IMG/VR virus record: IMGVR_UViG_3300028654_000384
Location: 151,858 to 215,857 of that record
DNA: 64,000 bases
Direction: 5' to 3' (one strand)
The translations under genes and the position numbers were made by a program. A model generated the notes under the pieces. It did not search any database and was not told the origin of the DNA. It saw nothing but the letters and a program-made list of their open reading frames with translations. Each line of letters opens with the position of its first letter. The stretch's first letter is position 1. Below are positions 3,376-60,403 of this stretch, piece by piece.

Positions 3376-3411
3376 GATCTAACTCTACCAGGTTCGTGGT
3401 GGAACTTGCAC
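3376..3411 (-). promoter_or_regulatory. Phage consensus promoter (radA)
   Basis: TGCAAG-17-TAGAGT-TAGATC, short leader with GGAG. Confidence 0.75.
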
Positions 3412-3413
3412 TA

Positions 3414-3527
3414 TCACCGAGCCAGGATGAACATGCCCAGTGCGACCCACGAGGCGCCACAGACGACGAGGGCAGCGCTCCAGAACATCACCATCTCGGC
3501 CCGACTTGCCTTTGCTTCCTTCATCAT
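3414..3527 (-). CDS. 37-aa single-TM peptide, leaderless
   Basis: MMKEAKASRAEMVMFWSAALVVCGASWVALGMFILAR; ATG 6 nt after -10 box. Confidence 0.6.
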   Translation of the reverse strand: MMKEAKASRAEMVMFWSAALVVCGASWVALGMFILAR

Positions 3528-3563
3528 GATCTAATCCTACCACGGTCGCCGGCGAACTTGCAC
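3528..3563 (-). promoter_or_regulatory. Phage consensus promoter, leaderless
   Basis: TGCAAG-17-TAGGAT-TAGATC-ATG. Confidence 0.8.
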
Positions 3564-3570
3564 TGTCCCC

Positions 3571-3593
3571 GAATTATACCCCGGGTGTAATCC
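3571..3593. promoter_or_regulatory. 9-5-9 palindrome (operator-like), copy 1
   Basis: GAATTATAC-CCCGG-GTGTAATCC just upstream of the 3528..3563 promoter. Confidence 0.65.
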
Positions 3594-3737
3594 TAGCCTG
3601 CCTGTCCCGGGACACCCCCGGACCCACCCAGGTGCGGCCCGACGGCCCACAGGACGGCCCAGGTCACCTTGCCACGGGCGGGAGGCAGTTCCACCCCTTC
3701 GATTATTGTGGGTGCCCGGTGACAAGGCACGTGGACG

Positions 3738-3773
3738 GTGTAAGTCCCCGGTGAATCGTGGTAGAGTTAGATC
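3738..3773 (+). promoter_or_regulatory. Phage consensus promoter, leaderless
   Basis: TGTAAG-17-TAGAGT-TAGATC-ATG. Confidence 0.8.
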
Positions 3774-4073
3774 ATGGTAGCAAATAGGTCTCGCCTCAAC
3801 GTGCCCATCCACAGTGCTCGCAAGTTCAGGTGGAGCAACGATTTCACCGGCAGTGCCGAGGTGTCTGACTTCAGCCGAACAATCAGCTCGCGGGTGTACA
3901 CCGATGCCGCGGACGTGGGTTTCATCTGTGAATCACCGCGGACGGGTAAACAGGTGCTGTTCACGTTGTGTGAAGAAGAACGGCACGATGGTGAGTTGGT
4001 GTCGGAGACCTACGTGTCGTGCGCTTTTGGGGGTTGGGTGCCCGACATGCGCATCATAATCTTCAACGACTGA
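3774..4073 (+). CDS. Hypothetical protein, leaderless cassette
   Basis: ORF begins exactly at promoter ATG. Confidence 0.7.
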   Translation: MVANRSRLNVPIHSARKFRWSNDFTGSAEVSDFSRTISSRVYTDAADVGFICESPRTGKQVLFTLCEEERHDGELVSETYVSCAFGGWVPDMRIIIFND

Positions 4074-4074
4074 A

Positions 4075-4110
4075 GTGCAAGTTCAACTCCGAACCTGGTA
4101 GGATTAGATC
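4075..4110 (+). promoter_or_regulatory. Phage consensus promoter, leaderless
   Basis: TGCAAG-17-TAGGAT-TAGATC-ATG. Confidence 0.8.
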
Positions 4111-4407
4111 ATGATCAAATACAAGCGTGCCCCTGCCGGGTACATTGCCCAGTTCTTCACAGACGAGAAGCTCCCATACCCGGGCGCGGTCAACCAGGAT
4201 TACCGTGACAACCATTTCATGGACGTGACAGGAGACTGGTGTCCCACTCTCCCGGAGGCGATCGAGTCAGTCAAGAAACAACGTCCCAAGGAGATCAAGA
4301 AGCTCCAGAAAAAGCTCGAAGCGCTTGAGGCGAGAGCTCAGGAACTGAGGGCTTACATCAAACAACTCCAGGAAACGTCAGCGACCTCCGTCGAAGAGAA
4401 AGTCTGA
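4111..4407 (+). CDS. Hypothetical protein with C-terminal coiled coil
   Basis: Leaderless start; heptad-like KKLQKKLEALEARAQEL. Confidence 0.7.
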   Translation: MIKYKRAPAGYIAQFFTDEKLPYPGAVNQDYRDNHFMDVTGDWCPTLPEAIESVKKQRPKEIKKLQKKLEALEARAQELRAYIKQLQETSATSVEEKV

Positions 4408-4448
4408 GGAAGATCTGTGCAAGTTCAACTTCGAACCTGGTGGTTGCA

Positions 4449-4484
4449 GTGCAAGTTGCCCTGCAACTGGCATAGGATTAGATC
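4449..4484 (+). promoter_or_regulatory. Phage consensus promoter, leaderless
   Basis: TGCAAG-17-TAGGAT-TAGATC-ATG; preceded by a broken copy at 4417..4446. Confidence 0.8.
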
Positions 4485-4727
4485 ATGGCAAAGAGAACCC
4501 TCAAAGTCGGCGACGAATTCCACAAGGGCCTGTGCATTGTGCGGGTGATGACCCTCGAGAACCCGGGCAGGTTCCCGGTACGCTACGTGTGGGTCGTCGA
4601 GGCCAATGGCCGCCGCGAAGCGGACCATTGTGGCCGTGAAATGGCCGGCGTCAATTCGGTCAGCGGCACCTTCAAGTTCCTCGAAGGCGAGGGCTTCACC
4701 TATCACCCGGTGCAAGTCACCGCCTGA
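4485..4727 (+). CDS. Hypothetical protein, leaderless cassette
   Basis: ORF at promoter ATG; its 3' end overlaps the next promoter. Confidence 0.7.
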   Translation: MAKRTLKVGDEFHKGLCIVRVMTLENPGRFPVRYVWVVEANGRREADHCGREMAGVNSVSGTFKFLEGEGFTYHPVQVTA

Positions 4728-4745
4728 TCGTGGTAGAGTTAGATC
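4710..4745 (+). promoter_or_regulatory. Phage consensus promoter, leaderless
   Basis: TGCAAG-17-TAGAGT-TAGATC-ATG. Confidence 0.8.
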
Positions 4746-5177
4746 ATGGCAAAGAAAGTAGCAAAGAAGTCATCCAAGGCGACACCGTCTCACTACTGCG
4801 TCGGCGACACATTTGTACACTCCGACCACAACGCGGGAGTGCACATCCGGGTAGTAGCTGTCACCTCTAACTCGGTGTCTTACACGTGGCACTATTCGCC
4901 CGGTGGTGTCGGCGAGCCACCGTGGAAACAGCCCGTGTCACATTCACAGTTTCAAACGCTGCTCACTGACTTTGGCTTCACAAAGCAAAGCTGTAACAAG
5001 AGACGCGCGGCGCTCGTCGATCACATTGCACTGGCGGTGTGCAATGCGTTCAACCGAGAGGTCAGCAACGCGCTCAGTGAATTGACTCCCGTGTCGCCCG
5101 GGCTCATTGAACACGATGGGGCGATGATCATCATGAAAGATGCAGTGCACGCCGCCATTCAGCGCTTGACTTCGTAG
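4746..5177 (+). CDS. Hypothetical protein, leaderless cassette
   Basis: 143 aa ORF at promoter ATG. Confidence 0.7.
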   Translation: MAKKVAKKSSKATPSHYCVGDTFVHSDHNAGVHIRVVAVTSNSVSYTWHYSPGGVGEPPWKQPVSHSQFQTLLTDFGFTKQSCNKRRAALVDHIALAVCNAFNREVSNALSELTPVSPGLIEHDGAMIIMKDAVHAAIQRLTS

Positions 5178-5182
5178 GAGCA

Positions 5183-5218
5183 GTGCAAGTCTTCCGTCAC
5201 TCGTGGTATCCTGATCTC
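5183..5218 (+). promoter_or_regulatory. Phage promoter variant
   Basis: TGCAAG-17-TATCCT; AAGGA SD-like downstream. Confidence 0.55.
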
Positions 5219-5244
5219 TCCACCCATAATCAAGGAATGAAGCC

Positions 5245-5484
5245 ATGTCGATGCGATCCACCAACTCTCCCCGCCGTGTCTACTCCCGCAACAACGTCGT
5301 CCACGTGCTGTTCGCCGGCACCGTCTTCGGCCCCAACGGCGACACCAAGGTGCGCCTCGACACCCCCGTCCGCATCACCGGCAACGGCGACGGGACATGC
5401 ACCATCGTGCAGCGCCGTGCTCACGCCAAGGGCATCACCGAAGTGTGGCCGCAGGTCAAGGTGCCCTGCACCCCGCGTGGTTAG
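5245..5484 (+). CDS. Hypothetical protein
   Basis: GC3-rich codon pattern, downstream of promoter variant. Confidence 0.6.
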   Translation: MSMRSTNSPRRVYSRNNVVHVLFAGTVFGPNGDTKVRLDTPVRITGNGDGTCTIVQRRAHAKGITEVWPQVKVPCTPRG

Positions 5485-5487
5485 GTC

Positions 5488-5760
5488 GTGATTCACACAG
5501 GTCCCCGGGTACACATTCCTCACGGTGACTCAAATGATCGAACGGATGCGAACCTGCTGCCCGGTACCCTGGCCATCGCCGGTGCCCTCTGGCACGACGT
5601 AGACCTACAGCAACCCGTGGTGGGCACCAATTTTCTGTGTCTCATCGTCGGCGAGGTGTGCAATGGCAACATCTGGCGACCCACGTTGGTCAGTGCGCTC
5701 GACGGAGGGGTGCTGTTTGGCTCAGCCTTCTATTTGGAGCCGACGACCGTTAGGTCGTGA
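5488..5760 (+). CDS. PGxL/SH3-like family protein (inverted relative to array)
   Basis: LPGTLA..LW..FLCLIV..NIWRPTLVSALDGGVL; shares WRPTLV with 6205..6471. Confidence 0.65.
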   Translation: MIHTGPRVHIPHGDSNDRTDANLLPGTLAIAGALWHDVDLQQPVVGTNFLCLIVGEVCNGNIWRPTLVSALDGGVLFGSAFYLEPTTVRS

Positions 5761-5990
5761 CTTCGCTCAAGTGCCCAGGCCTCGCGCACGCCGAAACAGC
5801 TGACCCACAGCAATTGATCACCAAACAGGATGAACGGGTGGTCACCGGTGATATCTTGGCACGAGATGACGAGGCACAGCGTGGGGCGCTGCACCTGGGT
5901 GACATAGTCAGCGGGTAGCATTGTCTCATTGCTCCACAACACCGCGCCCGGGACGACGGTGATCAATTGTCCGGGTCGCAGCACGCTCAT
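5730..5990 (-). CDS. PGxL/SH3-like family protein
   Basis: RPGQLI..VLW..LCLVI..FGDQLLW. Confidence 0.7.
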   Translation of the reverse strand: MSVLRPGQLITVVPGAVLWSNETMLPADYVTQVQRPTLCLVISCQDITGDHPFILFGDQLLWVSCFGVREAWALERSHDLTVVGSK

Positions 5991-6208
5991 GTCGGCACCC
6001 GATGCAGGTACACGTGGCTACACCACAGTAGCTGATCATCACCGGTGAGGACGAGTGCCAGTTGCCATTTTTTTGATGTCCTGATCACAGCGATGATGAG
6101 TGACACGCTATCGGGCTTGTTCAATACGTTAAAGCCACGCATCCTTCCGTCGTCGCAAGTTCTCCACCCGGCGTCGCAGAGGACCAGCTGTCCGGGCACC
6201 AGTTTCAT
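5987..6208 (-). CDS. PGxL/SH3-like family protein
   Basis: VPGQLV..SLIIAV..LTGDDQLLW; ATGA coupling. Confidence 0.7.
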   Translation of the reverse strand: MKLVPGQLVLCDAGWRTCDDGRMRGFNVLNKPDSVSLIIAVIRTSKKWQLALVLTGDDQLLWCSHVYLHRVPT

Positions 6209-6471
6209 ACCTGCCTCAGGTAGTGTTCACTAGTCCACAACAATCGCCCATCACTAGTGACGACGAGTGTCGGCCGCCAGTTGTTAGAAATGACACCAGC
6301 AGAGGTGCCGATGACGAGGCACAGTTCTTCACGCCAGACGCGGCGAACATAATCGATCAGTGTTTGATTGAACCACAGACCCGCACCTGGGATCAGGAAT
6401 GTCAGTTGACCCGGTTGATAGAGCCAATCGTCACCTGTCACAACAGCCTCCAACGTCCGGGGTGGGCCCAC
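6205..6471 (-). CDS. PGxL/SH3-like family protein
   Basis: QPGQLT..GLW..LCLVI..TSDGRLLW. Confidence 0.7.
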   Translation of the reverse strand: MGPPRTLEAVVTGDDWLYQPGQLTFLIPGAGLWFNQTLIDYVRRVWREELCLVIGTSAGVISNNWRPTLVVTSDGRLLWTSEHYLRQV

Positions 6472-6898: not shown

Positions 6899-6941
6899 TA
6901 ATCATACCCCTGGTGTCGGTCAGTGTTCAAGCGTTGAACAT

Positions 6942-8659: not shown

Positions 8660-8666
8660 GGTGCAC

Positions 8667-10854: not shown

Positions 10855-11037
10855 CTACGGCACCTCGATGACGTGTGACTGGGCGATGAGGTTGCCGTCG
10901 CTGTCGAGGGTGACGGTGTGGACCCACTGGCCGTCGCAGTACCAGCAGCACTCGAGCTCGATGAGGGGCTCGGTGGGAATGTTGTTGATGAGCCGGGTGT
11001 GCCAGAGGTGGTCACCGGGGCAGAAAGTGGGGTCCAT
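10855..11037 (-). CDS. Hypothetical protein, leaderless (PGDHL N-terminus)
   Basis: ORF starts at promoter ATG. Confidence 0.65.
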   Translation of the reverse strand: MDPTFCPGDHLWHTRLINNIPTEPLIELECCWYCDGQWVHTVTLDSDGNLIAQSHVIEVP

Positions 11038-11073
11038 GATCTAATCCTACCAGGAACGGGTGGTCTCTTGCAC
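11038..11073 (-). promoter_or_regulatory. Phage consensus promoter, leaderless
   Basis: TGCAAG-17-TAGGAT-TAGATC-ATG. Confidence 0.8.
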
Positions 11074-11080
11074 TGTCCAT

Positions 11081-11103
11081 GAATTATACCCGGAGTGTAA
11101 TTC
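11081..11103. promoter_or_regulatory. 9-5-9 palindrome, copy 2 (between divergent promoters)
   Basis: GAATTATAC-CCGGA-GTGTAATTC. Confidence 0.7.
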
Positions 11104-14448: not shown

Positions 14449-14504
14449 AAATTGCTTCAGTCCTCACGGACTTCAGGACGTGAATTACACCCCGAGTATA
14501 ATTC
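14449..14504 (+). repeat. 56-bp element, inverted copy at 47902..47957; includes 9-5-9 palindrome copy 3 (14482..14504)
   Basis: 54/56 identity to reverse complement of 47902..47957. Confidence 0.9.
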
Positions 14505-14512: not shown

Positions 14513-14548
14513 GTGCAAGCGCACTGACTTCTGGCTTACAGTTAGATC
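14513..14548 (+). promoter_or_regulatory. Phage consensus promoter, leaderless
   Basis: TGCAAG-17-TACAGT-TAGATC-ATG. Confidence 0.8.
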
Positions 14549-15292
14549 ATGAGGACGATAGGAATCATGACGATGGCCTGCCTGGTGGGAGCAACGCTCC
14601 CACTGGTTGCCTGTGGCGGCGCGCCCCCGGCAGCGCCCCCCGAGCTGACGAGTGCCTGCGCCGGCCATACCTGCAGTGGGGGTTCCACCCCCACCAGCCC
14701 CACCGACCCTTCACTTGCCCCCACCGTGTCGCCCCCAAGCGCTTCGTCGGTGCCGGCGAAGGAATCCCCTTCGCCTGAGGCGGGGATTTTACCTGATGCC
14801 GCCACGGTGCCAGTGGGGGCAACGCCCCCACCAGCCCCACCATCGACCCCGCTTCCCGACGCTGCCAGTGAGGGTTCAACCCTCACCGCCGTCGATATCG
14901 ATGCAGGTACCATGGTCAGTGTCCCCGAAGTCGATGCCGGGCCCGATGCGCCGGTTATGGCCGTGCTTCAAACCGACGCCGCGCCACTGCCCGATCCCTG
15001 TGCTGGTGCGAGTGGGGGTTCCACCCCCACCATGGTTCCTCGTGCCTATCCGGGCGGCGGTGGCATCGGTTGTGCGCGGCTCGCGGGTACCGGCACCTCG
15101 GTGCCTTGCCAGTGCTTCGTTACTGCTGGTGAGGGCGGCACCCTCACTGCCACCGCGCTGGCCCTTACCGTCTGCGGGCCGACGGGCTGCAACTGCATCG
15201 CCAACGACGGCGAGGGCCCGGCTGACCGCCCGTACTGCATCGGGCCCAAGTGCACCGCTGACCAGATCGCCAACCAGACGTGCTGGTATTGA
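14549..15292 (+). CDS. Lipoprotein with Pro/Ser/Thr linker and Cys-rich C-terminus
   Basis: Lipobox LVAC-GG; DAG/PDA-rich linker; 8 Cys in the C-terminal domain. Confidence 0.75.
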   Translation: MRTIGIMTMACLVGATLPLVACGGAPPAAPPELTSACAGHTCSGGSTPTSPTDPSLAPTVSPPSASSVPAKESPSPEAGILPDAATVPVGATPPPAPPSTPLPDAASEGSTLTAVDIDAGTMVSVPEVDAGPDAPVMAVLQTDAAPLPDPCAGASGGSTPTMVPRAYPGGGGIGCARLAGTGTSVPCQCFVTAGEGGTLTATALALTVCGPTGCNCIANDGEGPADRPYCIGPKCTADQIANQTCWY

Positions 15293-26434: not shown

Positions 26435-26470
26435 GTGTAAATTGGACGCAGCTCGACTTAGGATCTAACT
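26435..26470 (+). promoter_or_regulatory. Phage promoter with SD leader
   Basis: TGTAAA-17-TAGGAT; AAGGAG before ATG 26492. Confidence 0.65.
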
Positions 26471-30151: not shown

Positions 30152-30215
30152 AACTACCTTCGTTCGAGTGCATCATCCTAGGGCGGCTCGTGGAATTGTA
30201 CCCGAGGTGTAATCC
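30152..30215 (+). repeat. Dispersed element AACTACCT-N16-TCCTAGGGCGG plus 9-5-9 palindrome copy 4 (30193..30215)
   Basis: Same arrangement at 47852..47924 and 57444..57517. Confidence 0.7.
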
Positions 30216-30223: not shown

Positions 30224-30259
30224 GTGCAAGTTCACCCCTGACCATGGTAGGATTAGATC
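30224..30259 (+). promoter_or_regulatory. Phage consensus promoter, leaderless
   Basis: TGCAAG-17-TAGGAT-TAGATC-ATG. Confidence 0.8.
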
Positions 30260-30556
30260 ATGGCAAAGCAGACGGCAAAAGCAACGATCGTCAACGGCAT
30301 CCACGTCCTCCACACCGACGGCGGACGCAAGACCTACGGCATCACCGTCCGGGCGACGGGCACCGAAGCCGACGTCGAGAAAAAAGGCTTCAAGCGCGAG
30401 TGGGACCTCAATGCCCGCTACATTCTCGACACCACGTTCGAGCGTCTTGAGGGACTGTTGGGCCTGTCTCGCCTTGAACACGTTGCCCTCATCGTCGCCG
30501 CTCAATCGAAGATGAACGAAGAGGCGGCCGCCGAGGCACAGCGCTTCACCAAGTAA
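30260..30556 (+). CDS. Hypothetical protein, leaderless cassette
   Basis: ORF at promoter ATG. Confidence 0.7.
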   Translation: MAKQTAKATIVNGIHVLHTDGGRKTYGITVRATGTEADVEKKGFKREWDLNARYILDTTFERLEGLLGLSRLEHVALIVAAQSKMNEEAAAEAQRFTK

Positions 30557-32759: not shown

Positions 32760-32795
32760 GTGCAAGCCGCCGGTGACATGGCCTAAGATGGAGCC
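32760..32795 (+). promoter_or_regulatory. Phage promoter variant
   Basis: TGCAAG-17-TAAGAT. Confidence 0.65.
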
Positions 32796-32796
32796 C

Positions 32797-33018
32797 ATGG
32801 AAACCTTGAGCACCGAATTGGTGGGATTGCCCCGGAAATTGGCGTCGGTCCGGATGCGTTTGGTCGATGCTCGTGTTGGCCTCGACCTGTTCATCGCCGA
32901 GGCACAAAAAGCGCTGGCCACGCGCGAGCTGACGGTTGATCAACACGTGTCGCTGTCGGCGATCTTGGCATCGGTGGAACTCGAGGCCATGCGCTTTGAC
33001 GTCATCGGCGCACCGTAA
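32797..33018 (+). CDS. Hypothetical helical protein
   Basis: Downstream of promoter; start approximate. Confidence 0.6.
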   Translation: METLSTELVGLPRKLASVRMRLVDARVGLDLFIAEAQKALATRELTVDQHVSLSAILASVELEAMRFDVIGAP

Positions 33019-47851: not shown

Positions 47852-47957
47852 AACTACCTGCACGTGGGTTGGTTATCCTAGGGCGGTCTGTGGGTGGTCA
47901 GGAATTACACTCGGGGTGTAACTCACGTCCTGAAGTCCGTGAGGACTGAAGCAATTT
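47852..47957 (+). repeat. AACTACCT-N16-TCCTAGGGCGG element, palindrome copy 5 (47902..47924) and inverted copy of 14449..14504
   Basis: Direct sequence comparison. Confidence 0.85.
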
Positions 47958-47964: not shown

Positions 47965-48000
47965 GTGCAAGTCACCCCATGACCGTGGTAGGATTAGATC
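47965..48000 (+). promoter_or_regulatory. Phage consensus promoter, leaderless
   Basis: TGCAAG-17-TAGGAT-TAGATC-ATG. Confidence 0.8.
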
Positions 48001-48249
48001 ATGGCAATCAAAGCACTCAAGTACAAGCGCGAAATCCGCAAGCCCAACGGCATGACCATCGTTCACAACGGCTGGTGCACCACGCTGCCAGACTCCGCAG
48101 AGGAGATGCGTCAGCTCATCAGGCAGGGGCCCAACAGTGGGGGCAACGTCTTCTGCCGTGGGACGGGTGACGACTACATCCTCAACAATCCGTGTGTCGT
48201 CAGGTACTACCTTGACGGAAAGTTCGTCAGGGCATTCACCTGCAAGTGA
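48001..48249 (+). CDS. Hypothetical protein, leaderless cassette
   Basis: ORF at promoter ATG. Confidence 0.7.
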   Translation: MAIKALKYKREIRKPNGMTIVHNGWCTTLPDSAEEMRQLIRQGPNSGGNVFCRGTGDDYILNNPCVVRYYLDGKFVRAFTCK

Positions 48250-48251
48250 CG

Positions 48252-48287
48252 GTGTAAGTCGCTGTCGATTCCTGATAGGATCAGATC
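48252..48287 (+). promoter_or_regulatory. Phage consensus promoter, leaderless
   Basis: TGTAAG-17-TAGGAT-CAGATC-ATG. Confidence 0.75.
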
Positions 48288-48497
48288 ATGATCACCGTCA
48301 ACCGAGATAAGCTCAAGAGCCTGCTGTACACGCCCCCTCCCGCTCCCGTGGGCTTCAATAGGCCACCGCCGAGCTACAAGGGTTACGGAGCGTGGCTCGA
48401 CTACAAGTCGGAGTTGCAGGACGCAGTCGATGAGCTGCTCGAGCAAGGCCTGACCGAGCAAGAAGCCGCGCGGGCCTGCAACCAGCTGTTGTCGTAG
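48288..48497 (+). CDS. Hypothetical protein, leaderless cassette
   Basis: ORF at promoter ATG. Confidence 0.7.
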   Translation: MITVNRDKLKSLLYTPPPAPVGFNRPPPSYKGYGAWLDYKSELQDAVDELLEQGLTEQEAARACNQLLS

Positions 48498-48501
48498 ACG
48501 A

Positions 48502-48537
48502 GTGCAAGTCTTCACCCGTTCGTGGTACAGTTAGATC
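48502..48537 (+). promoter_or_regulatory. Phage consensus promoter, leaderless
   Basis: TGCAAG-17-TACAGT-TAGATC-ATG. Confidence 0.8.
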
Positions 48538-48690
48538 ATGGTGAAGTTCAACGTCACGGTGATCGATCGCGGTGAACAACGCATCGTCGAGGTCATGACG
48601 GCCAAGACGGAAGCAATTGTCCGTCGGTCGTTCCGTCGCCTGCAGAAGCAGCACGGCCGCGAGAACGCGGTGCTCGTTGGCCCAGTGTAA
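48538..48690 (+). CDS. 50-aa hypothetical protein (below ORF-track cutoff)
   Basis: MVKFNVTVIDRGEQRIVEV...; stop is the GTG-TAA of the next promoter. Confidence 0.65.
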   Translation: MVKFNVTVIDRGEQRIVEVMTAKTEAIVRRSFRRLQKQHGRENAVLVGPV

Positions 48691-48720
48691 GTTCCACTTC
48701 GATCCTGGTACAGTTAGATC
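48685..48720 (+). promoter_or_regulatory. Phage consensus promoter, leaderless
   Basis: TGTAAG-17-TACAGT-TAGATC-ATG. Confidence 0.8.
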
Positions 48721-49116
48721 ATGGCCACCAAGCGAACCCCAAAGCGGTCCCCTCTAGTTCAAGCGGCTCTCACCCACCTCAAGACGACGGCCGACTACAA
48801 GGACGGCATCCCGAGGAGCTACATGCGCGGTGATGCCGAGAGCGGCGCCACCGAGTACGCCCTGCTCGCCTACGTCGAGGAGTTGGAGAAGCGTCCCAAG
48901 AAGGCGACGAAGAAGGCGACCTCACCTGACCTTCGTGATGCAGTCATCACCCGCATGCGAGACATGCTCCGTGAGGTGCAGGCGCTCCACTTTCACCGGC
49001 CCGACGCCGACGCGATGCAGTTCTGTGTAGGTTGTGGCGGTAACCCAAACCACACGCCACAACACGATGATGACTGCATCGTCGTCCGCCTTGCCCACCT
49101 CCTCGATGAGGTCTGA
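48721..49116 (+). CDS. Hypothetical protein with C-terminal CxxC/H/C Zn motif
   Basis: FCVGCG..HDDDC. Confidence 0.7.
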   Translation: MATKRTPKRSPLVQAALTHLKTTADYKDGIPRSYMRGDAESGATEYALLAYVEELEKRPKKATKKATSPDLRDAVITRMRDMLREVQALHFHRPDADAMQFCVGCGGNPNHTPQHDDDCIVVRLAHLLDEV

Positions 49117-49142
49117 AAGCCGACGCTTGCAGAGGTCTAACG

Positions 49143-49178
49143 GTGCAAGGTCACTGACGATCGTGGTACAGTTGTTCT
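49143..49178 (+). promoter_or_regulatory. Phage promoter
   Basis: TGCAAG-17-TACAGT. Confidence 0.7.
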
Positions 49179-50633: not shown

Positions 50634-50669
50634 GTGTAAGGTACCCTGCAACTGGCATAGGATCTAATT
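50634..50669 (+). promoter_or_regulatory. Phage promoter with SD leader
   Basis: TGTAAG-17-TAGGAT; AAGGAG before ATG 50686. Confidence 0.7.
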
Positions 50670-51094: not shown

Positions 51095-51370
51095 ATGCTC
51101 GATGAAGATCTCATCGTGCGCCTTCGAGTGCTCGATGAAGCGTGTCGGACGGCGACGTCGTCGGGCATTGACACTCGACCGTGGGAAGAGGAGATTGCCT
51201 ACGTCAAGCGTGAGCAGCACCTCCGGCGCGCGCGCCGTGAACAGCACTTGATCTACGCTCGCAAGATCGAGCAGGAGTTCAACGATTCCGAGCGCGGGTT
51301 GCCTGCGGGTGACTTTGACAACTCGGCATTCGTCTACGCGGCATCGGGCGGTCGTCCGAGGTGGAACTGA
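51095..51370 (+). CDS. Helical hypothetical protein coupled to sigma gene; start uncertain
   Basis: TGATG overlap with sigma ATG. Confidence 0.6.
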   Translation: MLDEDLIVRLRVLDEACRTATSSGIDTRPWEEEIAYVKREQHLRRARREQHLIYARKIEQEFNDSERGLPAGDFDNSAFVYAASGGRPRWN

Positions 51371-52206
51371 TGACGATCGAAAATCGTACTGCGCACAACG
51401 TCGTCGGCACTTACCTCGACAACCTACAACACTTTTCACAGCTCAAACACCCGGAGCTCGTGGAGCTGTTCAAGTCCTACGAAGTCGGTTGCACCCGCGA
51501 TGAGACGGGTGAGGTCACCGATCGTACTCCCGAGGCCTTCAAGCTGCGCAACAAGATCTTGGAGTGCAACCTGCGACTGGTGGTGTCGATCGCCAAGCAG
51601 TACCGAGGTCACAACCTACCGATCGAAGACCTCATTCAAGAAGGCAACATCGGCCTGATGAAGGCAGTCGATCGGTTCAAGTGGGAGAAGGGCTTTCGCT
51701 TCTCGACCTACGCCACGTGGTGGATCAAGCAGGCCATTGGTCAGCACGTCCTCAAGCGCAAGCGGATGATTCGCTTGCCCGCTCACGCGGCGACGGTGCA
51801 GCGCAAGATGTTGCAGGCGGCCGAAGAGTACCGTGAAAGCAACAATTGCGAGCCCACGACTGAGGAGCTGATGGGCCTGACCGGCGCCAGCGCGACGGTG
51901 ATGAAGGCGACGATTCACTCGGGTCGTGGCACCATTTCGTTGCAGCAACCCCTGTCGTCGAGCGGCGAAGGCGACACTCTCGAGGACAAGGTCGAAGACG
52001 ATCGCCCGGGCTCGAATCCATTCGAGAACGTGGCCGAGAAGCAATTGCTCGAGATCACCAAGATGGTGCTCGGTGAGCTGTCGGCCAAGGAGGCGGCGAT
52101 CCTTCGCCTGCGCTTCGGCCTCGTCGAGGACGCGACTGATGACCAGTCGTATCCCATCACCGAGGAAGAGGCACGCCAAGTCATGGCGGGGAAAGGCCTG
52201 ACATGA
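51370..52206 (+). CDS. Phage sigma70-family (RpoD/group 1-3-like) sigma factor lacking region 4.2
   Basis: NLRLVVSIAKQY, DLIQEGNIGLMKAVDRF, GFRFSTYATWWIKQAI, IRLPAH, LSAKEAAILRLRFGL; ends before the RERIRQIE helix. Confidence 0.92.
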   Translation: MTIENRTAHNVVGTYLDNLQHFSQLKHPELVELFKSYEVGCTRDETGEVTDRTPEAFKLRNKILECNLRLVVSIAKQYRGHNLPIEDLIQEGNIGLMKAVDRFKWEKGFRFSTYATWWIKQAIGQHVLKRKRMIRLPAHAATVQRKMLQAAEEYRESNNCEPTTEELMGLTGASATVMKATIHSGRGTISLQQPLSSSGEGDTLEDKVEDDRPGSNPFENVAEKQLLEITKMVLGELSAKEAAILRLRFGLVEDATDDQSYPITEEEARQVMAGKGLT

Positions 52207-52875: not shown

Positions 52876-53178
52876 ATGGCACTGCACCGAGGTACCAAGG
52901 TCGATCGCGGTTACGCCACTGTCGCCGACGATGAGGGCGATAACTACCGTGAGATCGCCGACATGATGACGGAGATGGGTTTCTCGATGAACCATTCGTC
53001 GGCACGCAACTACGTGCTGCGCGTGATGCGGAAGTTCGCCCGAGCCTTCGTCGAGCAGTGGAACATCGCACACGATGATCAGAAGATCGATGAGATTGCC
53101 AAGAATCCGCAATTTCAACACGGCATCGCCGACCTGCTCCAGATCATCGAATCACAGCGCCGCGGGAATGGCGTATAA
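52876..53178 (+). CDS. Stand-alone sigma4-like helix-turn-helix protein
   Basis: GDNYREIADMM..MNHSSARNYVLRVMRKF resembles sigma region 4.2 (SYxEIA..S..TVRSRL.RARxKL); AGGAG SD. Confidence 0.6.
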   Translation: MALHRGTKVDRGYATVADDEGDNYREIADMMTEMGFSMNHSSARNYVLRVMRKFARAFVEQWNIAHDDQKIDEIAKNPQFQHGIADLLQIIESQRRGNGV

Positions 53179-54124: not shown

Positions 54125-54160
54125 GTGTAAGCTTGGCCGCCACCGAGGTAGATTGAAACA
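54125..54160 (+). promoter_or_regulatory. Phage promoter with SD leader
   Basis: TGTAAG-17-TAGATT; AAGGAG before ATG 54182. Confidence 0.65.
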
Positions 54161-55950: not shown

Positions 55951-55973
55951 CAATTACACCCGGGGTATAATTT
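55951..55973. promoter_or_regulatory. 9-5-9 palindrome, copy 6
   Basis: CAATTACAC-CCGGG-GTATAATTT. Confidence 0.65.
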
Positions 55974-57443: not shown

Positions 57444-57600
57444 AACTACCTTCGCTCGACCGCATTGTCCTAGGGCGGCCTGTGGGATTGGTCGGAATTA
57501 CATCTCGGGTATAATTTTGAGCAGTGTAACACGGCACGATGTGCCTTACACACAGTGTAAGTTCCCGGACAATCGTGGTAGGATTAGATCATGTTGAAGC
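57444..57600 (+). repeat. AACTACCT-N16-TCCTAGGGCGG element, palindrome copy 7 (57495..57517), 79-bp repeat copy 2 with promoter 57555..57590
   Basis: Direct sequence comparison. Confidence 0.85.
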
Positions 57601-57820: not shown

Positions 57821-57856
57821 GTGAAAGTTCCACTCCGAACCTGGTAGAGTTAGATC
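57821..57856 (+). promoter_or_regulatory. Phage consensus promoter, leaderless
   Basis: TGAAAG-17-TAGAGT-TAGATC-ATG. Confidence 0.75.
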
Positions 57857-58171
57857 ATGTGGACAAAGGCAAGCATTGCACAGTTGCTGCGCACCCACGA
57901 CCATGCCGTCGAACGCGCCATCGTCGCCATCTACGAGCACCAGACGCTGGACGAGAAGGTGGCGCGCCACACGAAGCGCATCAATCCACGTGGCTTTCAT
58001 GCCAACCACACCATCACGGGTTCGTACTACGCCATCTTGGTGCTCGCGGGCCGGCGCTTGGTCGGCTATCACCTCGCCAACGCCCGCAACATCGTCCTGT
58101 GTTACACTACGCAATTGGCCGACAGGGCCAACGCCCGGGCCGCGCGCCTTGCCAAACGAGAAGTAGCATGA
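57857..58171 (+). CDS. Phage hypothetical protein
   Basis: MWTKASIAQLL..AVERAIVAIYEHQT..GF; leaderless. Confidence 0.7.
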   Translation: MWTKASIAQLLRTHDHAVERAIVAIYEHQTLDEKVARHTKRINPRGFHANHTITGSYYAILVLAGRRLVGYHLANARNIVLCYTTQLADRANARAARLAKREVA

Positions 58172-58330: not shown

Positions 58331-58612
58331 ATGACACTCAAGCGCTTGTTGATGCTGACCGTCTGTCCCGTGCTCCTGTTGTTCCTCATCGTCGCATTGT
58401 TTGTGCTGATCCACTTCACGCAACCGCCTTGTACCTGCAAAGAAGTGATCAACATTCTCCCGCAACATGCTACTCGCGCGTATGTCACCTACCAGTGTAC
58501 CGACAACACCATCAACGTGGGTTCATATCACTGGAGCAATGACTTTACGTGTGCGGGTAAGACGTACCACGTCGGCGACTACATCCCGGGTTACGGAACC
58601 AAGCAGTTCTAA
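58331..58612 (+). CDS. Membrane-anchored small Cys-containing protein
   Basis: Long N-terminal TM; CTC..C..C. Confidence 0.65.
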   Translation: MTLKRLLMLTVCPVLLLFLIVALFVLIHFTQPPCTCKEVINILPQHATRAYVTYQCTDNTINVGSYHWSNDFTCAGKTYHVGDYIPGYGTKQF

Positions 58613-58636
58613 ACCATCATCACCACCGAGACATCC

Positions 58637-58918
58637 ATGAAAAAGCCCACCAAGACGAAGAAGGACCGCACCGTCGGTCTCCACGAGTACCGCTGCGCCG
58701 CGAACCCCGACGAGAAGGCCTTCGCCGATGCGACCGCGCACTGCGATCCGCCAATGTTGGGCTACTTGCTCAACGAACCAGGCTCGCAGTATCAGTATCC
58801 ACTCGACCCGACTGACCGCGACCGATGCGTCGCGGCAACGGTGGTGCAGTGGTTGGGTTCACCCGTCGGCAGGGCATTCTTGAGTGAGCTGGGTTGGGTG
58901 AAGAAGGACGGGCGCTAA
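58637..58918 (+). CDS. Hypothetical protein
   Basis: VAATVVQWLGSPVG..FL motif. Confidence 0.7.
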   Translation: MKKPTKTKKDRTVGLHEYRCAANPDEKAFADATAHCDPPMLGYLLNEPGSQYQYPLDPTDRDRCVAATVVQWLGSPVGRAFLSELGWVKKDGR

Positions 58919-58919
58919 C

Positions 58920-59156
58920 GTGGCCCGAGGCAGGTGGACGGACGCGGCCTTCAAGGACTATCCCAAACGCTACGCCACGCCCGACACGGTGCAGGAAGGC
59001 CAGTGGCTGTGCCATGCGCCGACGAAGACGTGGTTCGAGTTCTACGTGCTGATGGCTGACGGCGTGGCGGTCGGCTTCACTTTCGGTGACAAGGACTTCT
59101 TCAAGCCGCTGGTCGAGTGCTACCACCAGTGGGATCCCAGTGTCGACGCAGCGTGA
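58920..59156 (+). CDS. Hypothetical protein
   Basis: In-line ORF, GC3 bias. Confidence 0.6.
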   Translation: MARGRWTDAAFKDYPKRYATPDTVQEGQWLCHAPTKTWFEFYVLMADGVAVGFTFGDKDFFKPLVECYHQWDPSVDAA

Positions 59157-59370
59157 CCTAAAACCCGGCGACCTGATCGAGTGGGTGTATGAACCCGAGA
59201 ATGTGCTCGTGGCCGCCAATGAACAGCTGTGGTCATCGGTGATGAAGGCTTGGGTGTTCATTGGCGGTGCTCACTTGCTCATTGCCCGTGCCGAAGGCAC
59301 CCTGACGTGGTTGCCCCTCAGTGCACTTGACAAGAGGTTGCTCCACGCGCGCGAGGATGATACAGTGTAA
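59140..59370 (+). CDS. KPGDLIEW family protein (member H), ends in a solitary CRISPR-like repeat
   Basis: LKPGDLIEWVY..EQLWSSV..IGGAHLLIARAEGTLTWLPL..RLLHAREDDTV-stop. Confidence 0.75.
   Translation: MSTQRDLKPGDLIEWVYEPENVLVAANEQLWSSVMKAWVFIGGAHLLIARAEGTLTWLPLSALDKRLLHAREDDTV
59336..59364 (+). CRISPR. Solitary type I-E-like repeat unit
   Basis: GGTTGCTCCACGCGCGCGAGGATGATACA, 28/29 identical to the array repeat. Confidence 0.7.
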
Positions 59371-59400
59371 GTCAACACCTAATCGGGGTATGATCTGATC
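59365..59400 (+). promoter_or_regulatory. Phage consensus promoter, leaderless, abutting the repeat
   Basis: TGTAAG-17-TATGAT-CTGATC-ATG. Confidence 0.75.
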
Positions 59401-59622
59401 ATGGTCGCTAGCAATAGAACAATCACTGACGTCTACCGGGTACTGCAGGTATGGGTGCCCGATCACTTGATCCGCGGCGACATGCTCGAAGGCCTGGCCA
59501 TGGTGACTGGGAACCGCTCATTCACTGAGACCGTCAACAACCTGTTGGAGCTACACAGGAGTTTGCACCCGACGCCCGGTACGCCGCCCGCATCACCCGA
59601 GACCAATGAGATGTGCCCATGA
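59401..59622 (+). CDS. Hypothetical protein, leaderless cassette
   Basis: ORF at promoter ATG. Confidence 0.65.
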   Translation: MVASNRTITDVYRVLQVWVPDHLIRGDMLEGLAMVTGNRSFTETVNNLLELHRSLHPTPGTPPASPETNEMCP

Positions 59623-59849
59623 TCACTGCCCTACCGCTACCTGGCACCCGCCTCAAGTGCACCAGCAACCGCGATCGCCCTGAACTCGTCGAGGGTCAGG
59701 AGTACGTCGTGGTGCCAGAGGTCGCCCTCGACAAGATGCCCATCAACTACAAGCGCTTTCAACCTGACGACTTTCGGTTGATCGCCGTCGGTCAGGGCAG
59801 TCACGCCGTCGGCATCTTTCCCGTCGGCATCTTCGAGGTGGTGCCGTGA
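59619..59849 (+). CDS. Hypothetical protein (PGTRL N-terminus)
   Basis: ATGA coupling. Confidence 0.6.
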   Translation: MITALPLPGTRLKCTSNRDRPELVEGQEYVVVPEVALDKMPINYKRFQPDDFRLIAVGQGSHAVGIFPVGIFEVVP

Positions 59850-60139
59850 ATGTGCCCGCAGACTACGAGGCGTGCGGTGAGTGCGGCTTTGATCACGGCT
59901 ATGAACAGACCAGCGCTGCACGTTGGCATGCTAAGGATACGATCACCGTCGCCAACAAGTACGTCGACAATGAGAGCATCATGGCGACCAGCGCAGTCGT
60001 CGCCCTCGATGACGCACAAGACCTGTTCGACAAGGGCGCGTACCCCGAGGCGGCCAAGCGAGCATTGACGTCGCTGAGTTACAGCCTGGGCATCTTGTCA
60101 CCCGTTTACCAGCGGGCGAAGGCAAACCTGGGTTTGTGA
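59846..60139 (+). CDS. Phage hypothetical protein
   Basis: CGECGFDH; SA..ALDDA..RALTSLSYSLGI. Confidence 0.65.
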   Translation: MNVPADYEACGECGFDHGYEQTSAARWHAKDTITVANKYVDNESIMATSAVVALDDAQDLFDKGAYPEAAKRALTSLSYSLGILSPVYQRAKANLGL

Positions 60140-60145
60140 GTGGCA

Positions 60146-60181
60146 GTGTAAGTTCGGTGGTGACTGTGGTAGAGTTAGATC
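60146..60181 (+). promoter_or_regulatory. Phage consensus promoter, leaderless
   Basis: TGTAAG-17-TAGAGT-TAGATC-ATG. Confidence 0.8.
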
Positions 60182-60367
60182 ATGGACACCGCAACAATCA
60201 TCGGTCTCTCTATCCTCGCCCTCTTCATCATTGGTGGCATGTTCATTTTCGCCTTCGTGGTGGGCAAAACTTACGACGCAGCGCGGGCACTACCGACGAC
60301 GCTGGGTCACGGTGCAGGCTCGTTTGCTCGAGCGTACGCCGAGGCGAAGAAGGGCAACAACCCGTAA
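60182..60367 (+). CDS. Small single-TM protein, leaderless
   Basis: IIGLSILALFIIGGMFIFAFVVG. Confidence 0.7.
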   Translation: MDTATIIGLSILALFIIGGMFIFAFVVGKTYDAARALPTTLGHGAGSFARAYAEAKKGNNP

Positions 60368-60403
60368 GTGTAAGTCATCACACAACCGTGGTAGAGTTAG
60401 ATC
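60368..60403 (+). promoter_or_regulatory. Phage consensus promoter, leaderless
   Basis: TGTAAG-17-TAGAGT-TAGATC-ATG. Confidence 0.8.

What the first reader, a model, noticed from the sequence alone, without database searches (positions are those of the whole stretch)
3376..60403. About 35 copies of one promoter, at least 24 placing ATG exactly 6 nt after the -10 box (a leaderless regulon)
Seen: gTG(C/T/A)AA(G/A)-N17-TA(G/C)(G/A)(A/G)T-(TAGATC)-ATG, with invariant 17-nt spacing, often TGG just before the -10 box, and no SD where ATG follows directly. Copies with a longer leader carry AAGGAG. Runs such as 3738..5218 and 47965..49178 give nearly every gene its own promoter. Known: ATG at about +1 produces leaderless mRNA translated by 70S ribosomes; in T4-type phages repeated early-promoter cassettes mediate modular gene shuffling. 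Inference: a large early regulon that may escape a shut-off aimed at SD-led host mRNAs, with the promoter doubling as a recombination handle.
Basis: partly seen in the sequence, partly recalled or inferred. Interest (0 to 1): 0.68.

Follow-up and report, generated by a model that had tools for sequence, protein, structure and literature searches.

The report
Leaderless promoter family in jumbo phage
An uncultured giant phage carries about 40 copies of one bacterial-type promoter, most of them set so that transcription should begin exactly at the ATG of the gene behind it. The same design recurs throughout a large, unstudied lineage of environmental giant phages that also share a truncated sigma factor.

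Summary
A position-weight scan finds 36 copies in 3376-60403 (38 in the window, 50 on the 215.9-kb contig). In 25 of the 36, an ATG lies exactly 6 nt after the -10 box and opens an ORF of 37-316 aa. The -35-to--10 spacing is 17 nt in 30 of 30 exact matches and never 13-16 or 18-22.

The element is a sigma-70-type promoter with an extended -10 box and a non-canonical -35 box, G-TG(C/T)AAG. By standard geometry it should start RNA at the A of AUG. No RNA data could be obtained, so this start site is inferred.

The window is the accessory arm of an uncultured jumbo myophage of about 361 kb. Among 78 related phage loci (35-61% GC), 99 of 317 TANNNT-N6-ATG sites carry TGNAA at exactly 17 nt.

New findings:
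- A conserved 21-23-bp palindrome sits upstream of eight promoters.
- The phage sigma factor lacks region 4.2.
- A 100-aa helix-turn-helix-like protein is always linked to the sigma gene.
- A separate 92-aa region-4.2 protein exists elsewhere in the genome.

"Early" timing is plausible. The shut-off-escape idea is unsupported. The recombination-handle idea has only within-genome hints.

The parts
   Evidence: matrix score 16.3, ORF 85 aa
1495..1538 (-). promoter copy, ATG at gap 12 (very short leader)
   Evidence: score 26.5, ORF 90 aa
3382..3410 (-). promoter copy with 24-nt leader before the 263-aa gene 2560-3351
   Evidence: score 28.6; GGAG in the leader
3525..3562 (-). leaderless promoter copy, divergent from 3739
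   Evidence: score 32.3, gap 6, ORF 37 aa
3739..3776 (+). leaderless promoter copy
   Evidence: score 28.2, gap 6, ORF 99 aa
4076..4113 (+). leaderless promoter copy
   Evidence: score 30.1, gap 6, ORF 98 aa; upstream stop codon ends at 4073
4417..4441 (+). truncated promoter copy (-35 box and spacer, no -10 box)
   Evidence: 96% identical to 4075-4099 over 25 nt (family D12)
4450..4487 (+). leaderless promoter copy
   Evidence: score 28.2, gap 6, ORF 80 aa
4711..4748 (+). leaderless promoter copy; upstream gene ends inside its spacer (4727)
   Evidence: score 28.1, gap 6, ORF 143 aa
5184..5212 (+). weak copy with 18-nt leader
   Evidence: score 13.7; poor -10 box
11035..11072 (-). leaderless promoter copy, divergent from 11123
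   Evidence: score 25.2, gap 6, ORF 60 aa
11123..11160 (+). leaderless promoter copy
   Evidence: score 27.5, gap 6, ORF 81 aa
11399..11427 (+). promoter copy, start codon ambiguous (ATG at gap 8)
   Evidence: score 27.0
14514..14551 (+). leaderless promoter copy
   Evidence: score 18.8, gap 6, ORF 247 aa
15342..15379 (+). leaderless promoter copy
   Evidence: score 23.7, gap 6, ORF 64 aa
19619..19647 (+). weak copy, leadered
   Evidence: score 14.5
26436..26464 (+). promoter copy with 21-nt SD-bearing leader
   Evidence: score 22.6, ORF 264 aa
27936..27964 (+). promoter copy with 14-nt leader, no SD
   Evidence: score 22.4, ORF 153 aa
28449..28486 (+). leaderless promoter copy before a methyltransferase-like gene
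   Evidence: score 31.5, gap 6, ORF 206 aa; Pfam sub-threshold methyltransferase
30225..30262 (+). leaderless promoter copy
   Evidence: score 30.0, gap 6, ORF 98 aa
31764..31801 (+). leaderless promoter copy before the HD-domain gene; orthologues also leaderless
   Evidence: score 21.2, ORF 316 aa. Orthologues at 51% and 46% identity keep -10, 6 nt, ATG with different gap letters
32761..32799 (+). weak copy, ATG at gap 7
   Evidence: score 12.6, ORF 73 aa
38406..38442 (+). promoter copy, ATG at gap 5
   Evidence: score 23.2, ORF 81 aa
40494..40531 (+). leaderless promoter copy
   Evidence: score 25.4, gap 6, ORF 121 aa
43481..43518 (+). leaderless promoter copy, last one before the tRNA array
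   Evidence: score 31.1, gap 6, ORF 173 aa
47448..47485 (+). leaderless promoter copy directly after the last tRNA
   Evidence: score 19.7, gap 6, ORF 104 aa
47966..48003 (+). leaderless promoter copy
   Evidence: score 31.1, gap 6, ORF 82 aa
48253..48290 (+). leaderless promoter copy
   Evidence: score 26.5, gap 6, ORF 69 aa; upstream stop ends at 48249
48503..48540 (+). leaderless promoter copy
   Evidence: score 27.5, gap 6, ORF 50 aa
48686..48723 (+). leaderless promoter copy; overlaps the upstream stop (48690)
   Evidence: score 26.5, gap 6, ORF 131 aa
49144..49172 (+). promoter copy without ATG nearby
   Evidence: score 24.5; start unclear
50635..50663 (+). promoter copy with 16-nt SD leader, 726 nt upstream of the sigma gene
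   Evidence: score 25.6; relatives also have a copy 0.6-1.6 kb before sigma
54126..54154 (+). promoter copy with 21-nt SD leader before an AAA ATPase gene
   Evidence: score 20.7; PF07728
56012..56049 (+). leaderless promoter copy inside a duplicated 110-nt cassette
   Evidence: score 32.4, ORF 231 aa; cassette 91.8% identical to the one at 57556
57556..57593 (+). leaderless promoter copy, second copy of the 110-nt cassette
   Evidence: score 32.4, ORF 73 aa; the two proteins are unrelated after residue 3
57822..57859 (+). leaderless promoter copy
   Evidence: score 26.4, gap 6, ORF 104 aa
59366..59403 (+). leaderless promoter copy
   Evidence: score 24.0, gap 6, ORF 73 aa
60147..60184 (+). 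leaderless promoter copy
   Evidence: score 30.9, gap 6, ORF 61 aa
60369..60406 (+). leaderless promoter copy; 49-aa ORF abuts the DNA ligase gene
   Evidence: score 29.7, gap 6
3571..3593 (.). upstream palindrome, 8-10 nt from the -35 box of promoter 3562
11081..11103 (.). upstream palindrome between divergent promoters 11072 and 11123
14482..14504 (.). upstream palindrome, 11 nt before the -35 box of 14514
30193..30215 (.). upstream palindrome, 11 nt before the -35 box of 30225
47902..47924 (.). upstream palindrome, 43 nt before promoter 47966
55951..55973 (.). upstream palindrome, about 40 nt before promoter 56012
57495..57517 (.). upstream palindrome, about 40 nt before promoter 57556
51361..52206 (+). 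phage sigma-70-family gene (281 aa) with regions 2, 3 and only the first half of region 4
   Evidence: PF04542 at 82 bits. RpoD-like by NCBIfam. PF04545 matched only at profile positions 1-22 of 50. No r4 hit in Pfam. C-terminal tail not conserved in 31 orthologues
52876..53178 (+). 100-aa helical protein always linked to the sigma gene; helix-turn-helix-like, candidate DNA-binding partner
   Evidence: present in 81 of 81 related loci; AF2 pLDDT 81.7; weak leads only

Best explanation
The repeats are genuine bacterial-type promoters used by host core RNA polymerase. Each has a -10 hexamer TA(G/C)(G/A)(G/A)T, usually extended by TG, and a lineage-specific box G-TG(C/T)AAG exactly 17 nt upstream. 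Because the -10 box ends 6 nt before an ATG, with C at -1 and A at +1, transcription should begin at the A of AUG. The mRNA then has no leader and no Shine-Dalgarno site, and a ribosome binds its 5' AUG directly. The promoters fill the whole gap between short, unrelated genes in a roughly 72-kb accessory arm of an uncultured jumbo myophage of about 361 kb. This arm also holds a 15-tRNA array and the phage's sigma gene. No intrinsic terminators separate the units, so downstream genes probably also lie on read-through transcripts. On those transcripts the AGGA inside TAGGAT could serve as a weak ribosome site (inference). I judge the first round of transcription to use the host's primary sigma through the extended -10 box, because the phage sigma gene itself lies behind such a promoter. 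That would make this an early class. The non-canonical -35 box and the related upstream palindrome are probably bound by a phage-encoded factor that tunes or later shuts these promoters. What is shown: the sequence anatomy, the statistics and the conservation. What is inferred: the start site, the timing and which factor reads the promoter.
For: Counts and spacing: 30 exact matches against 0.15 expected; only the 17-nt spacing occurs; ATG at gap 6 in 23 of 30 exact and 25 of 36 matrix sites. In each of the dozen or so copies checked by hand against the ORF list, the ATG is the first start after an in-frame stop, and the ORFs have positive coding scores. All 41 copies in the arm point at a same-strand ORF. 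The 31 leaderless proteins are mutually unrelated, so gene duplication does not explain the copies. The HD-gene orthologues at 51% and 46% identity keep -10, 6 nt, ATG with different gap letters. Family-wide, 126 matrix hits occur in 0.96 Mb of 78 related loci, 60 of them with ATG at gap 6. De novo, 99 of 317 TANNNT-N6-ATG sites have TGNAA at exactly 17 nt, against 0-8 at other spacings. No RNA polymerase subunit genes are detectable in the phage. There is no excess of terminators. In Deinococcus, a -10 box 6-7 bp before the ORF was shown experimentally to drive leaderless genes, and a -35 box at 17 bp enhances it (PMC12340547). Phage phiYS40 makes most of its middle and late mRNAs leaderless (PMC3594737).
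Against: The host is unknown, so its capacity for leaderless translation is assumed. The -35 box does not match TTGACA, while other promoters in the same genome do carry TTGACC- or TGAAC-type boxes. The box could therefore belong to a different holoenzyme. It is also conserved across phages of 35-61% GC, which argues for a phage-encoded reader rather than a host one. AGGA within TAGGAT leaves room for SD-led translation of read-through RNA.
Confidence: 0.75

Rival explanations
1. The promoters are read not by the host sigma but by the phage's own sigma, which lacks region 4.2. A separately encoded region-4-like helix-turn-helix protein would supply recognition of the G-TG(C/T)AAG box. That protein could be the 100-aa sigma-linked protein at 52876-53178 or the 92-aa region-4.2 protein elsewhere in the genome. 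This would be a split sigma. The regulon would then be a phage-sigma-dependent (middle) class, still leaderless.
For: The sigma keeps the -10-reading residues (Y430, W433 and Q437 equivalents) but lacks the -35-reading helix. The same -10 box type occurs with two different -35 types in one genome. The box is conserved across relatives of 35-61% GC that all carry this sigma. The 100-aa protein is present in 81 of 81 loci and has a region-4.2-like sequence pattern by eye. A 92-aa ORF matches PF04545 positions 19-50 at E 1.7e-9 and is conserved in the same jumbo contigs. Complex prediction of the sigma C-terminal part with the 100-aa protein gave weak support: score 0.37, best of 3 controls 0.00. 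That mark was reached by 58 of 80 solved complexes and 2 of 110 mismatched pairs. At 0.60 or under, only 7 of those 80 reached it, as did both mismatches that passed. The runs agree in at least 71% of contacts and the partner pLDDT is at least 59.
Against: The sigma gene and the 100-aa gene themselves lie behind such promoters, here and in relatives, so something else must fire them first. The region-4-like nature of the 100-aa protein is not established: PDB profile E 0.44, no Foldseek match, VIA Z 5.4 or less, Atlas feature score 0.87. The selection of loci by sigma makes the co-occurrence circular.
Confidence: 0.3
2. The element is mainly a mobile regulatory cassette of the T4 PeSL type. 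Its copies act as homology patches for recombination that shuffles accessory genes; promoter activity is secondary.
For: A 110-nt cassette (palindrome, hairpin, promoter, first three codons) is 91.8% identical before two unrelated genes. A truncated copy lies at 4417-4441. A palindrome-plus-35-nt module occurs in opposite orientations at 14482 and 47902. Sub-families share spacer sequence. The genes behind the copies have almost no detectable orthologues in relatives. PeSL precedent: PMC2839356, PMC4122927.
Against: No pair of closely related genomes with indels bounded by the cassettes could be found; the near relatives are the same phage at 99.99%. Most copies share only the functional boxes, as selection on promoter function alone would give. 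The upstream hairpins are not consistently stable (z -0.2 to -3.2).
Confidence: 0.3
3. The motif is a translation signal or protein-binding site next to start codons, like the start-associated sequences of cluster K mycobacteriophages or an AGGA ribosome site. Transcripts would start elsewhere.
For: TAGGAT places AGGA 7 nt before the ATG in 20 of 41 copies. Units are packed without terminators, so read-through RNAs are likely.
Against: Half of the copies use hexamers without AGGA but keep T, A and T at positions 1, 2 and 6. The upstream box at a rigid 17 nt, the TG at -15/-14, and a gap of exactly 6 nt together make the signature of a sigma-70 promoter, not of a ribosome site. In relatives the hexamer varies freely at positions 3-5.
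Confidence: 0.07
4. One reading: the leaderless design lets these genes escape a phage-imposed shut-off aimed at SD-led host mRNAs.
For: Precedent of a phage shifting the balance towards leaderless translation: phiYS40 raises IF2 and lowers IF3 (PMC3594737).
Against: Roughly 40% of genes in the other 148 kb carry an SD core 5-10 nt before the start, as do several units driven by this very promoter. No phage gene for S1, S21 or IF3 was found. Leaderless promoters also occur, less densely, in the replication and structural parts, so the design looks like a general habit of this phage and host.
Confidence: 0.1

Closest known systems
Leaderless genes of Deinococcus-Thermus and Actinobacteria (-10 box TANNNT 6-7 bp before the ORF)
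   Same: Same -10 type, same 6-7-nt distance to the start codon, 17-bp optimum to a -35 box, ATG at +1 (PMC12340547, PMC3160421, PMC4007540).
   Different: Here it is a phage regulon of near-identical copies with a strongly conserved non-canonical -35 box, an extended -10 box and a conserved gap sequence. It is not a loose genome-wide habit of a cell.
Thermus phages phiYS40 and P23-45 (leaderless middle/late mRNAs; extended -10 promoters)
   Same: A large phage using host RNA polymerase on extended -10 promoters, with many transcripts lacking a leader (PMC3594737, PMC3950348).
   Different: Those promoters lack a -35 element and belong to the middle and late classes. Here a rigid upstream box and a palindrome are present, the genes look early-type, and the phage encodes its own truncated sigma. 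There is no detectable sequence relationship.
T4-type early promoters and PeSL cassettes
   Same: Dozens of near-identical strong promoters with their own -35 flavour, one per small accessory gene, packed in variable regions; some are joined to an upstream inverted repeat (PMC2839356, PMC4122927).
   Different: T4 early transcripts have leaders with SD sites. The upstream inverted repeat here looks more like a protein-binding palindrome than a terminator.
T4 middle promoters (MotA box replacing the -35 element, sigma appropriation by AsiA)
   Same: A good, often extended -10 box combined with a phage-specific box near -30 to -35, read by a phage protein (my own knowledge, not tested here).
   Different: No MotA or AsiA homologues were sought or found. 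Here the phage carries a sigma without region 4.2 and stand-alone region-4-like proteins instead.
Start-associated sequences and stoperators of mycobacteriophages
   Same: Short asymmetric motifs repeated tens of times, oriented with transcription, near gene starts (my own knowledge).
   Different: Those are single 13-bp sites, not a bipartite element with -35/-10 spacing. The anatomy here is that of a promoter.

Membership tests
sigma-70-type promoter | -10 hexamer with T, A and T at positions 1, 2 and 6 | tested here: met
   When the hexamer is left free and only the -35 box and ATCATG are required, all 22 hexamers are TANNNT.
sigma-70-type promoter | spacer of 17 +/- 1 bp between the boxes | tested here: met
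   30 matches at 17 nt, none at 13-16 or 18-22. Family-wide: 99 at 17 nt against 0-8 at other spacings.
sigma-70-type promoter | -35 hexamer resembling TTGACA | tested here: not met
   The box is G-TG(C/T)AAG. A TTGACA/TATAAT consensus scan of window 1-20000 finds no excess.
sigma-70-type promoter | extended -10 TG at -15/-14 | tested here: met
   28 of 41 copies.
sigma-70-type promoter | transcription initiates 6-8 nt downstream of the -10 box | not testable with these tools
leaderless mRNA gene | start codon at the predicted +1 (-10 box 6-7 nt upstream) | tested here: met
   25 of 36 copies in the span at exactly 6 nt.
leaderless mRNA gene | AUG rather than GUG or UUG as the 5' codon | tested here: met
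   All 31 counted gap-6 leaderless starts on the contig are ATG, because the count required ATG; one further gap-6 copy (window 675) starts with GTG.
leaderless mRNA gene | no Shine-Dalgarno site | tested here: inconclusive
   There is no room on the predicted RNA. On read-through RNA, however, the TAGGAT copies would offer AGGA at 7 nt.
T4-type PeSL cassette | early promoter joined to an upstream stem-loop terminator | tested here: inconclusive
   A palindrome lies upstream of 8 copies. RNA folding z-scores range from -0.2 to -3.2. There is no U-tract and no terminator excess.
T4-type PeSL cassette | indels between sister genomes bounded by the cassettes | not testable with these tools
   The only near relatives are the same phage at 99.99%; the next nearest have 50-75% protein identity.
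split or truncated sigma factor | sigma lacks the region 4.2 helix-turn-helix | tested here: met
   PF04545 covered only at positions 1-22 of 50; no r4 hit; variable tail in 31 orthologues.
split or truncated sigma factor | a separate protein supplies region 4.2 and binds the sigma | tested here: inconclusive
   A 92-aa ORF matches PF04545 positions 19-50 at E 1.7e-9. For the 100-aa linked protein, complex prediction gave weak support: 0.37 against a best control of 0.00. Binding of the 92-aa protein was not tested.

The most novel reading that the evidence does not exclude
A widespread lineage of uncultured jumbo phages runs an orthogonal transcription module. A sigma factor has lost its -35-reading domain and works with a separately encoded region-4-like DNA-binding protein. 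That protein recognises the lineage-specific box G-TG(C/T)AAG, and as a dimer the related palindrome. Every promoter of this module is built to emit leaderless mRNA. This would be a two-piece sigma coupled to SD-independent translation, conserved across hosts of very different GC content.
Probability: 0.2. Interest if true: 0.85.

Novelty: new variant of a known kind. Interest (0 to 1): 0.6.

Why it matters
Leaderless expression in phages has been documented for very few systems, mainly Thermus phage phiYS40. Here it appears as the designed output of a dense promoter family, and the design is conserved in at least several hundred environmental jumbo-phage contigs. That offers three things:
- a ready rule for correcting start-codon calls in this lineage;
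- a compact promoter-plus-start module of about 38 nt that could be tested as a genetic part;
- a tractable question about how a sigma factor without region 4.2, two small region-4-like proteins, a non-canonical -35 box and a conserved palindrome fit together.

It also shows that promoter copies can occupy the whole intergenic space of a phage accessory arm.

Tried and rejected
- **RNA evidence:** No runs were available and read laying was not used.
- **Nucleotide relatives among cultured phages:** none. Ligase, DnaE, sheath and sigma proteins reach about 25-36% identity to cultured phages.
- **Motif search of viral contigs:** most single hits are at chance level for a 32-bit pattern. Only three contigs, all of them this same phage, had multiple hits.
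- **Sister genomes for the recombination test:** the near-identical contigs are the same phage, so the test was not possible.
- **Host inference from GroEL:** this returned only two Saccharibacteria MAG contigs at 47-48% identity, which I did not treat as a host call.
- **Consensus scans:** the E. coli-consensus promoter scan and the intrinsic-terminator scan showed no excess.
- **Upstream palindromes as RNA hairpins:** stability was inconsistent, so the terminator reading was not adopted.
- **Gene duplication as the source of the copies:** rejected, because there are no blastp hits among the 31 proteins.
- **Pfam and PHROGs on ten promoter-led proteins:** almost nothing found.
- **Phage genes for RNA polymerase beta and beta', S21, IF3 and S1:** none detected.
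- **Fold of the 100-aa protein:** Foldseek found nothing at E 0.001 or better. VIA-align's best Z was 5.4, among mixed small DNA-binding folds and below the level that means anything for helical proteins.
- **A second motif, ATA(C/G)TTA close to start codons:** only weakly supported.

Full report
- The pattern TGNAAR-N17-TASRRT occurs 30 times in the window, against 0.15 expected from shuffles.
- With the same two boxes, no other spacing from 13 to 22 nt occurs even once.
- A weight matrix using only the two boxes finds 36 sites within 3376-60403, 38 in the window and 50 on the whole contig. Shuffles give about 1-3.
- In 25 of the 36 sites, ATG follows the -10 box after exactly six bases and opens an ORF of 37-316 aa. 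Three more sites have gaps of 5, 7 or 8.
- G precedes the upstream box in 41 of 41 copies. TG sits at -15/-14 in 28. The six-base gap reads TAGATC in 21.
- When the hexamer is left free, all 22 recovered hexamers are TANNNT.

**Where it sits.** The window is the last 64 kb of a 215,857-bp IMG/VR contig. Other contigs of the same phage (99.99% identical) extend it, and one metagenome contig of 361,059 bp probably holds the whole genome.

It is a jumbo myophage. It encodes two tail-sheath paralogues of about 1,000 aa, DnaE, DnaB, a UvsX-like recombinase, ribonucleotide reductase and GroEL. It has no close cultured relative and no detectable RNA polymerase subunits.

The promoter copies are confined to a roughly 72-kb arm, from contig position 149 kb to about 221 kb. 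The arm is made of short genes, nearly all without known relatives. It also holds a 15-tRNA array, a DNA ligase, an HD-domain protein, an AAA ATPase and a sigma factor.

**Are the ATGs gene starts?**
- In each of the dozen or so copies I checked against the ORF list, the ATG is the first possible start after an in-frame stop. In the commonest form, TAG triplets in both the -10 box and the gap are in frame with the ATG.
- The ORFs have positive codon-usage scores. GC3 is 75% in this genome.
- The 31 proteins are mutually unrelated, so the copies are not by-products of gene duplication.
- The one promoter-led gene with orthologues in two related contigs is the HD protein, at 51% and 46% identity. 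Both orthologues keep the arrangement box, 17 nt, TANNNT, 6 nt, ATG, and all three proteins begin at the same residue. The spacer and gap letters differ.

**The lineage.** The phage sigma has relatives in at least 451 viral contigs, some of 270-370 kb, at 50-75% identity.
- In 78 such loci (0.96 Mb, 35-61% GC) the matrix finds 126 sites. Almost all of the sites listed are on the sigma strand. Sixty have ATG at gap 6 and twelve at gap 7.
- Without using the matrix: of 317 TANNNT-N6-ATG sites, 99 carry TGNAA at exactly 17 nt, against 0-8 at any other spacing.
- The design is therefore a lineage trait, not a quirk of one genome.

**How it most likely works.** A -10 hexamer ending at -7, a six-base discriminator and C(-1)/A(+1) put the expected start on the A of ATG. 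This follows from established knowledge of sigma-70 promoters. The same 6-7-bp rule was shown experimentally for leaderless genes of Deinococcus, where a -35 box at 17 bp boosts expression (PMC12340547).

The stop codon of each gene lies 2-27 nt before, or inside, the next promoter. Terminator-like hairpins are not enriched. Nested read-through transcripts are therefore likely. On these, the AGGA inside TAGGAT (20 of 41 copies) could act as a weak ribosome site. This last point is inference.

**Who reads the promoter?** This is unresolved.

The upstream box does not resemble TTGACA. Yet the replication and structural parts of the same genome hold leaderless promoters with TTGACC-, TTGACA- or TGAAC-type boxes and the same -10 type.

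The phage sigma keeps the residues that read the -10 box (equivalents of Y430, W433, Q437 and H455), but T440, R441 and E458 are replaced. It covers only positions 1-22 of the 50-position region-4 profile (no r4 hit). Its C-terminal tail varies among 31 orthologues.

Two small proteins could supply DNA contacts:
- **A 100-aa protein two genes downstream.** It is present in 81 of 81 related loci and has a region-4.2-like pattern by eye. The other evidence is weak: PDB profile E 0.44 to SigR region 4, Atlas feature score 0.87 to a viral cluster in which 19% of members carry Sigma70_r4, and no significant fold match. Complex prediction with the sigma C-terminal part gave weak support: score 0.37, best of 3 controls 0.00. 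That mark was reached by 58 of 80 solved complexes and 2 of 110 mismatched pairs. At 0.60 or under, only 7 of those 80 reached it, as did both mismatches that passed. The runs agree in at least 71% of contacts and the partner pLDDT is at least 59.
- **A 92-aa protein about 96 kb away.** It matches region-4 profile positions 19-50 at E 1.7e-9 and is conserved in the same jumbo contigs.

Against a purely phage-sigma-dependent class: the sigma gene and the 100-aa gene lie behind such promoters, both here and in relatives. I therefore favour first firing by the host holoenzyme through the extended -10 box, with the lineage-specific box serving a phage factor.

**A further element.** A 21-23-bp palindrome has half-sites that resemble the -35 box.
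- It occurs eight times on the contig, and only in the promoter arm.
- In five cases it ends 8-11 nt before a -35 box. In three it lies about 40 nt further upstream, with a short inverted repeat between.
- It is conserved in a relative whose proteins are 51-68% identical to this phage's.
- As RNA it folds no better than chance in most cases.
- It therefore looks like a protein-binding site rather than a terminator.

- *Early timing* fits the gene content but is untested.
- *Shut-off escape* is not supported. SD sites are common in the rest of the genome and in several units of this very family. No phage S1, S21 or IF3 gene was found.
- *Recombination handle* has three traces: a 110-nt cassette 91.8% identical before two unrelated genes, a truncated copy at 4417-4441, and a module found in both orientations. 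The sister-genome comparison that established PeSL exchange in T4-type phages (PMC2839356, PMC4122927) could not be made.

**Comparison with known systems.**
- It works like the leaderless promoters of Deinococcus-Thermus and Actinobacteria, and like the leaderless classes of Thermus phage phiYS40 (PMC3594737). The giant phage phiKZ, by contrast, showed no leaderless transcript (PMC8244752).
- It resembles T4 early promoters in copy number and placement.
- It differs from all of these in combining a rigid non-canonical upstream box, an extended -10 box, a fixed six-base gap and a conserved palindrome, in a lineage whose sigma lacks region 4.2.
- I class it as a new variant of a known kind.

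**Limits.** There are no RNA data. The host is unknown. My gene calls come from a simple codon-usage scorer. The related loci were chosen by the presence of the sigma gene, so the co-occurrence of sigma and motif is partly circular.

Noticed in passing
window 51361-52206; contig G004 57561-57839 (locus L150:5562-5840): The phage sigma factor covers only the first half of region 4. A separate 92-aa ORF about 96 kb away carries a cysteine-rich N-terminal part plus a clear region 4.2 helix-turn-helix (PF04545 positions 19-50, E 1.7e-9). That ORF is conserved in related jumbo contigs.
   Followed up: partly
window 52876-53178: A 100-aa four-helix protein is found next to the sigma gene in 81 of 81 related loci. 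It has an invariant MNHSS motif and a region-4-like pattern. Its function is unknown.
   Followed up: partly
window 3571, 11081, 14482, 30193, 47902, 55951, 57495; contig 149233: A conserved 21-23-bp palindrome lies upstream of promoter copies, and its half-sites resemble the -35 box. It is also present in a relative at 51-68% protein identity. It is a candidate operator.
   Followed up: partly
contig positions 1-148000 (loci L001-L008): About 20 further leaderless-type promoters (TANNNT 6-7 nt before ATG) carry canonical TTGACC-, TTGACA- or TGAAC-type -35 boxes before replication and structural genes. This is a second -35 class in the same genome.
   Followed up: partly
contig-wide, e.g. 13896, 47181, 60052, 95046, 102510; window 53697: A hexamer TA(C/G)TTA, often preceded by GA or TGA, lies 4-9 nt before start codons (19 forward-strand cases against about 5 expected). 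It may be a third promoter class, but support is modest.
   Followed up: partly
window 45446-47446: An array of 15 tRNA genes. Two of the ARAGORN calls have irregular anticodon loops (46276-46346 and 46352-46424).
   Followed up: no
window 19347, 29848, 44026, 49720, 49989, 50252, 59145: Seven small paralogous genes share an N-terminus beginning MKPGDLIEW. A 30-38-nt repeat (repeat finder family D10) follows three of the copies: 44210, 50439 (three tandem copies, 61-nt period, to 50598) and 59332.
   Followed up: no
window 19800-24800: A low-GC island (about 46% against 58%) holds four large ORFs of 372, 362, 580 and 319 aa. The three submitted to Pfam (372, 362 and 580 aa) had no match; the 319-aa ORF was not searched. 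The island looks like recently acquired DNA.
   Followed up: no
contig 142759-142800 (locus L008): A short tandem repeat with a 10-nt unit containing TGTAAG gives two false promoter hits in the matrix scan.
   Followed up: no
contig 6035-9115 and 9963-13013 (locus L001): Two adjacent tail-sheath paralogues of about 1,020 aa each, far longer than usual sheath proteins.
   Followed up: no
window 25074-26114, 34811-36109, 37380-38408: Host-like accessory genes: an OmpA-family peptidoglycan-binding protein, a family-4 glycosyltransferase and a class I/II aminotransferase.
   Followed up: no
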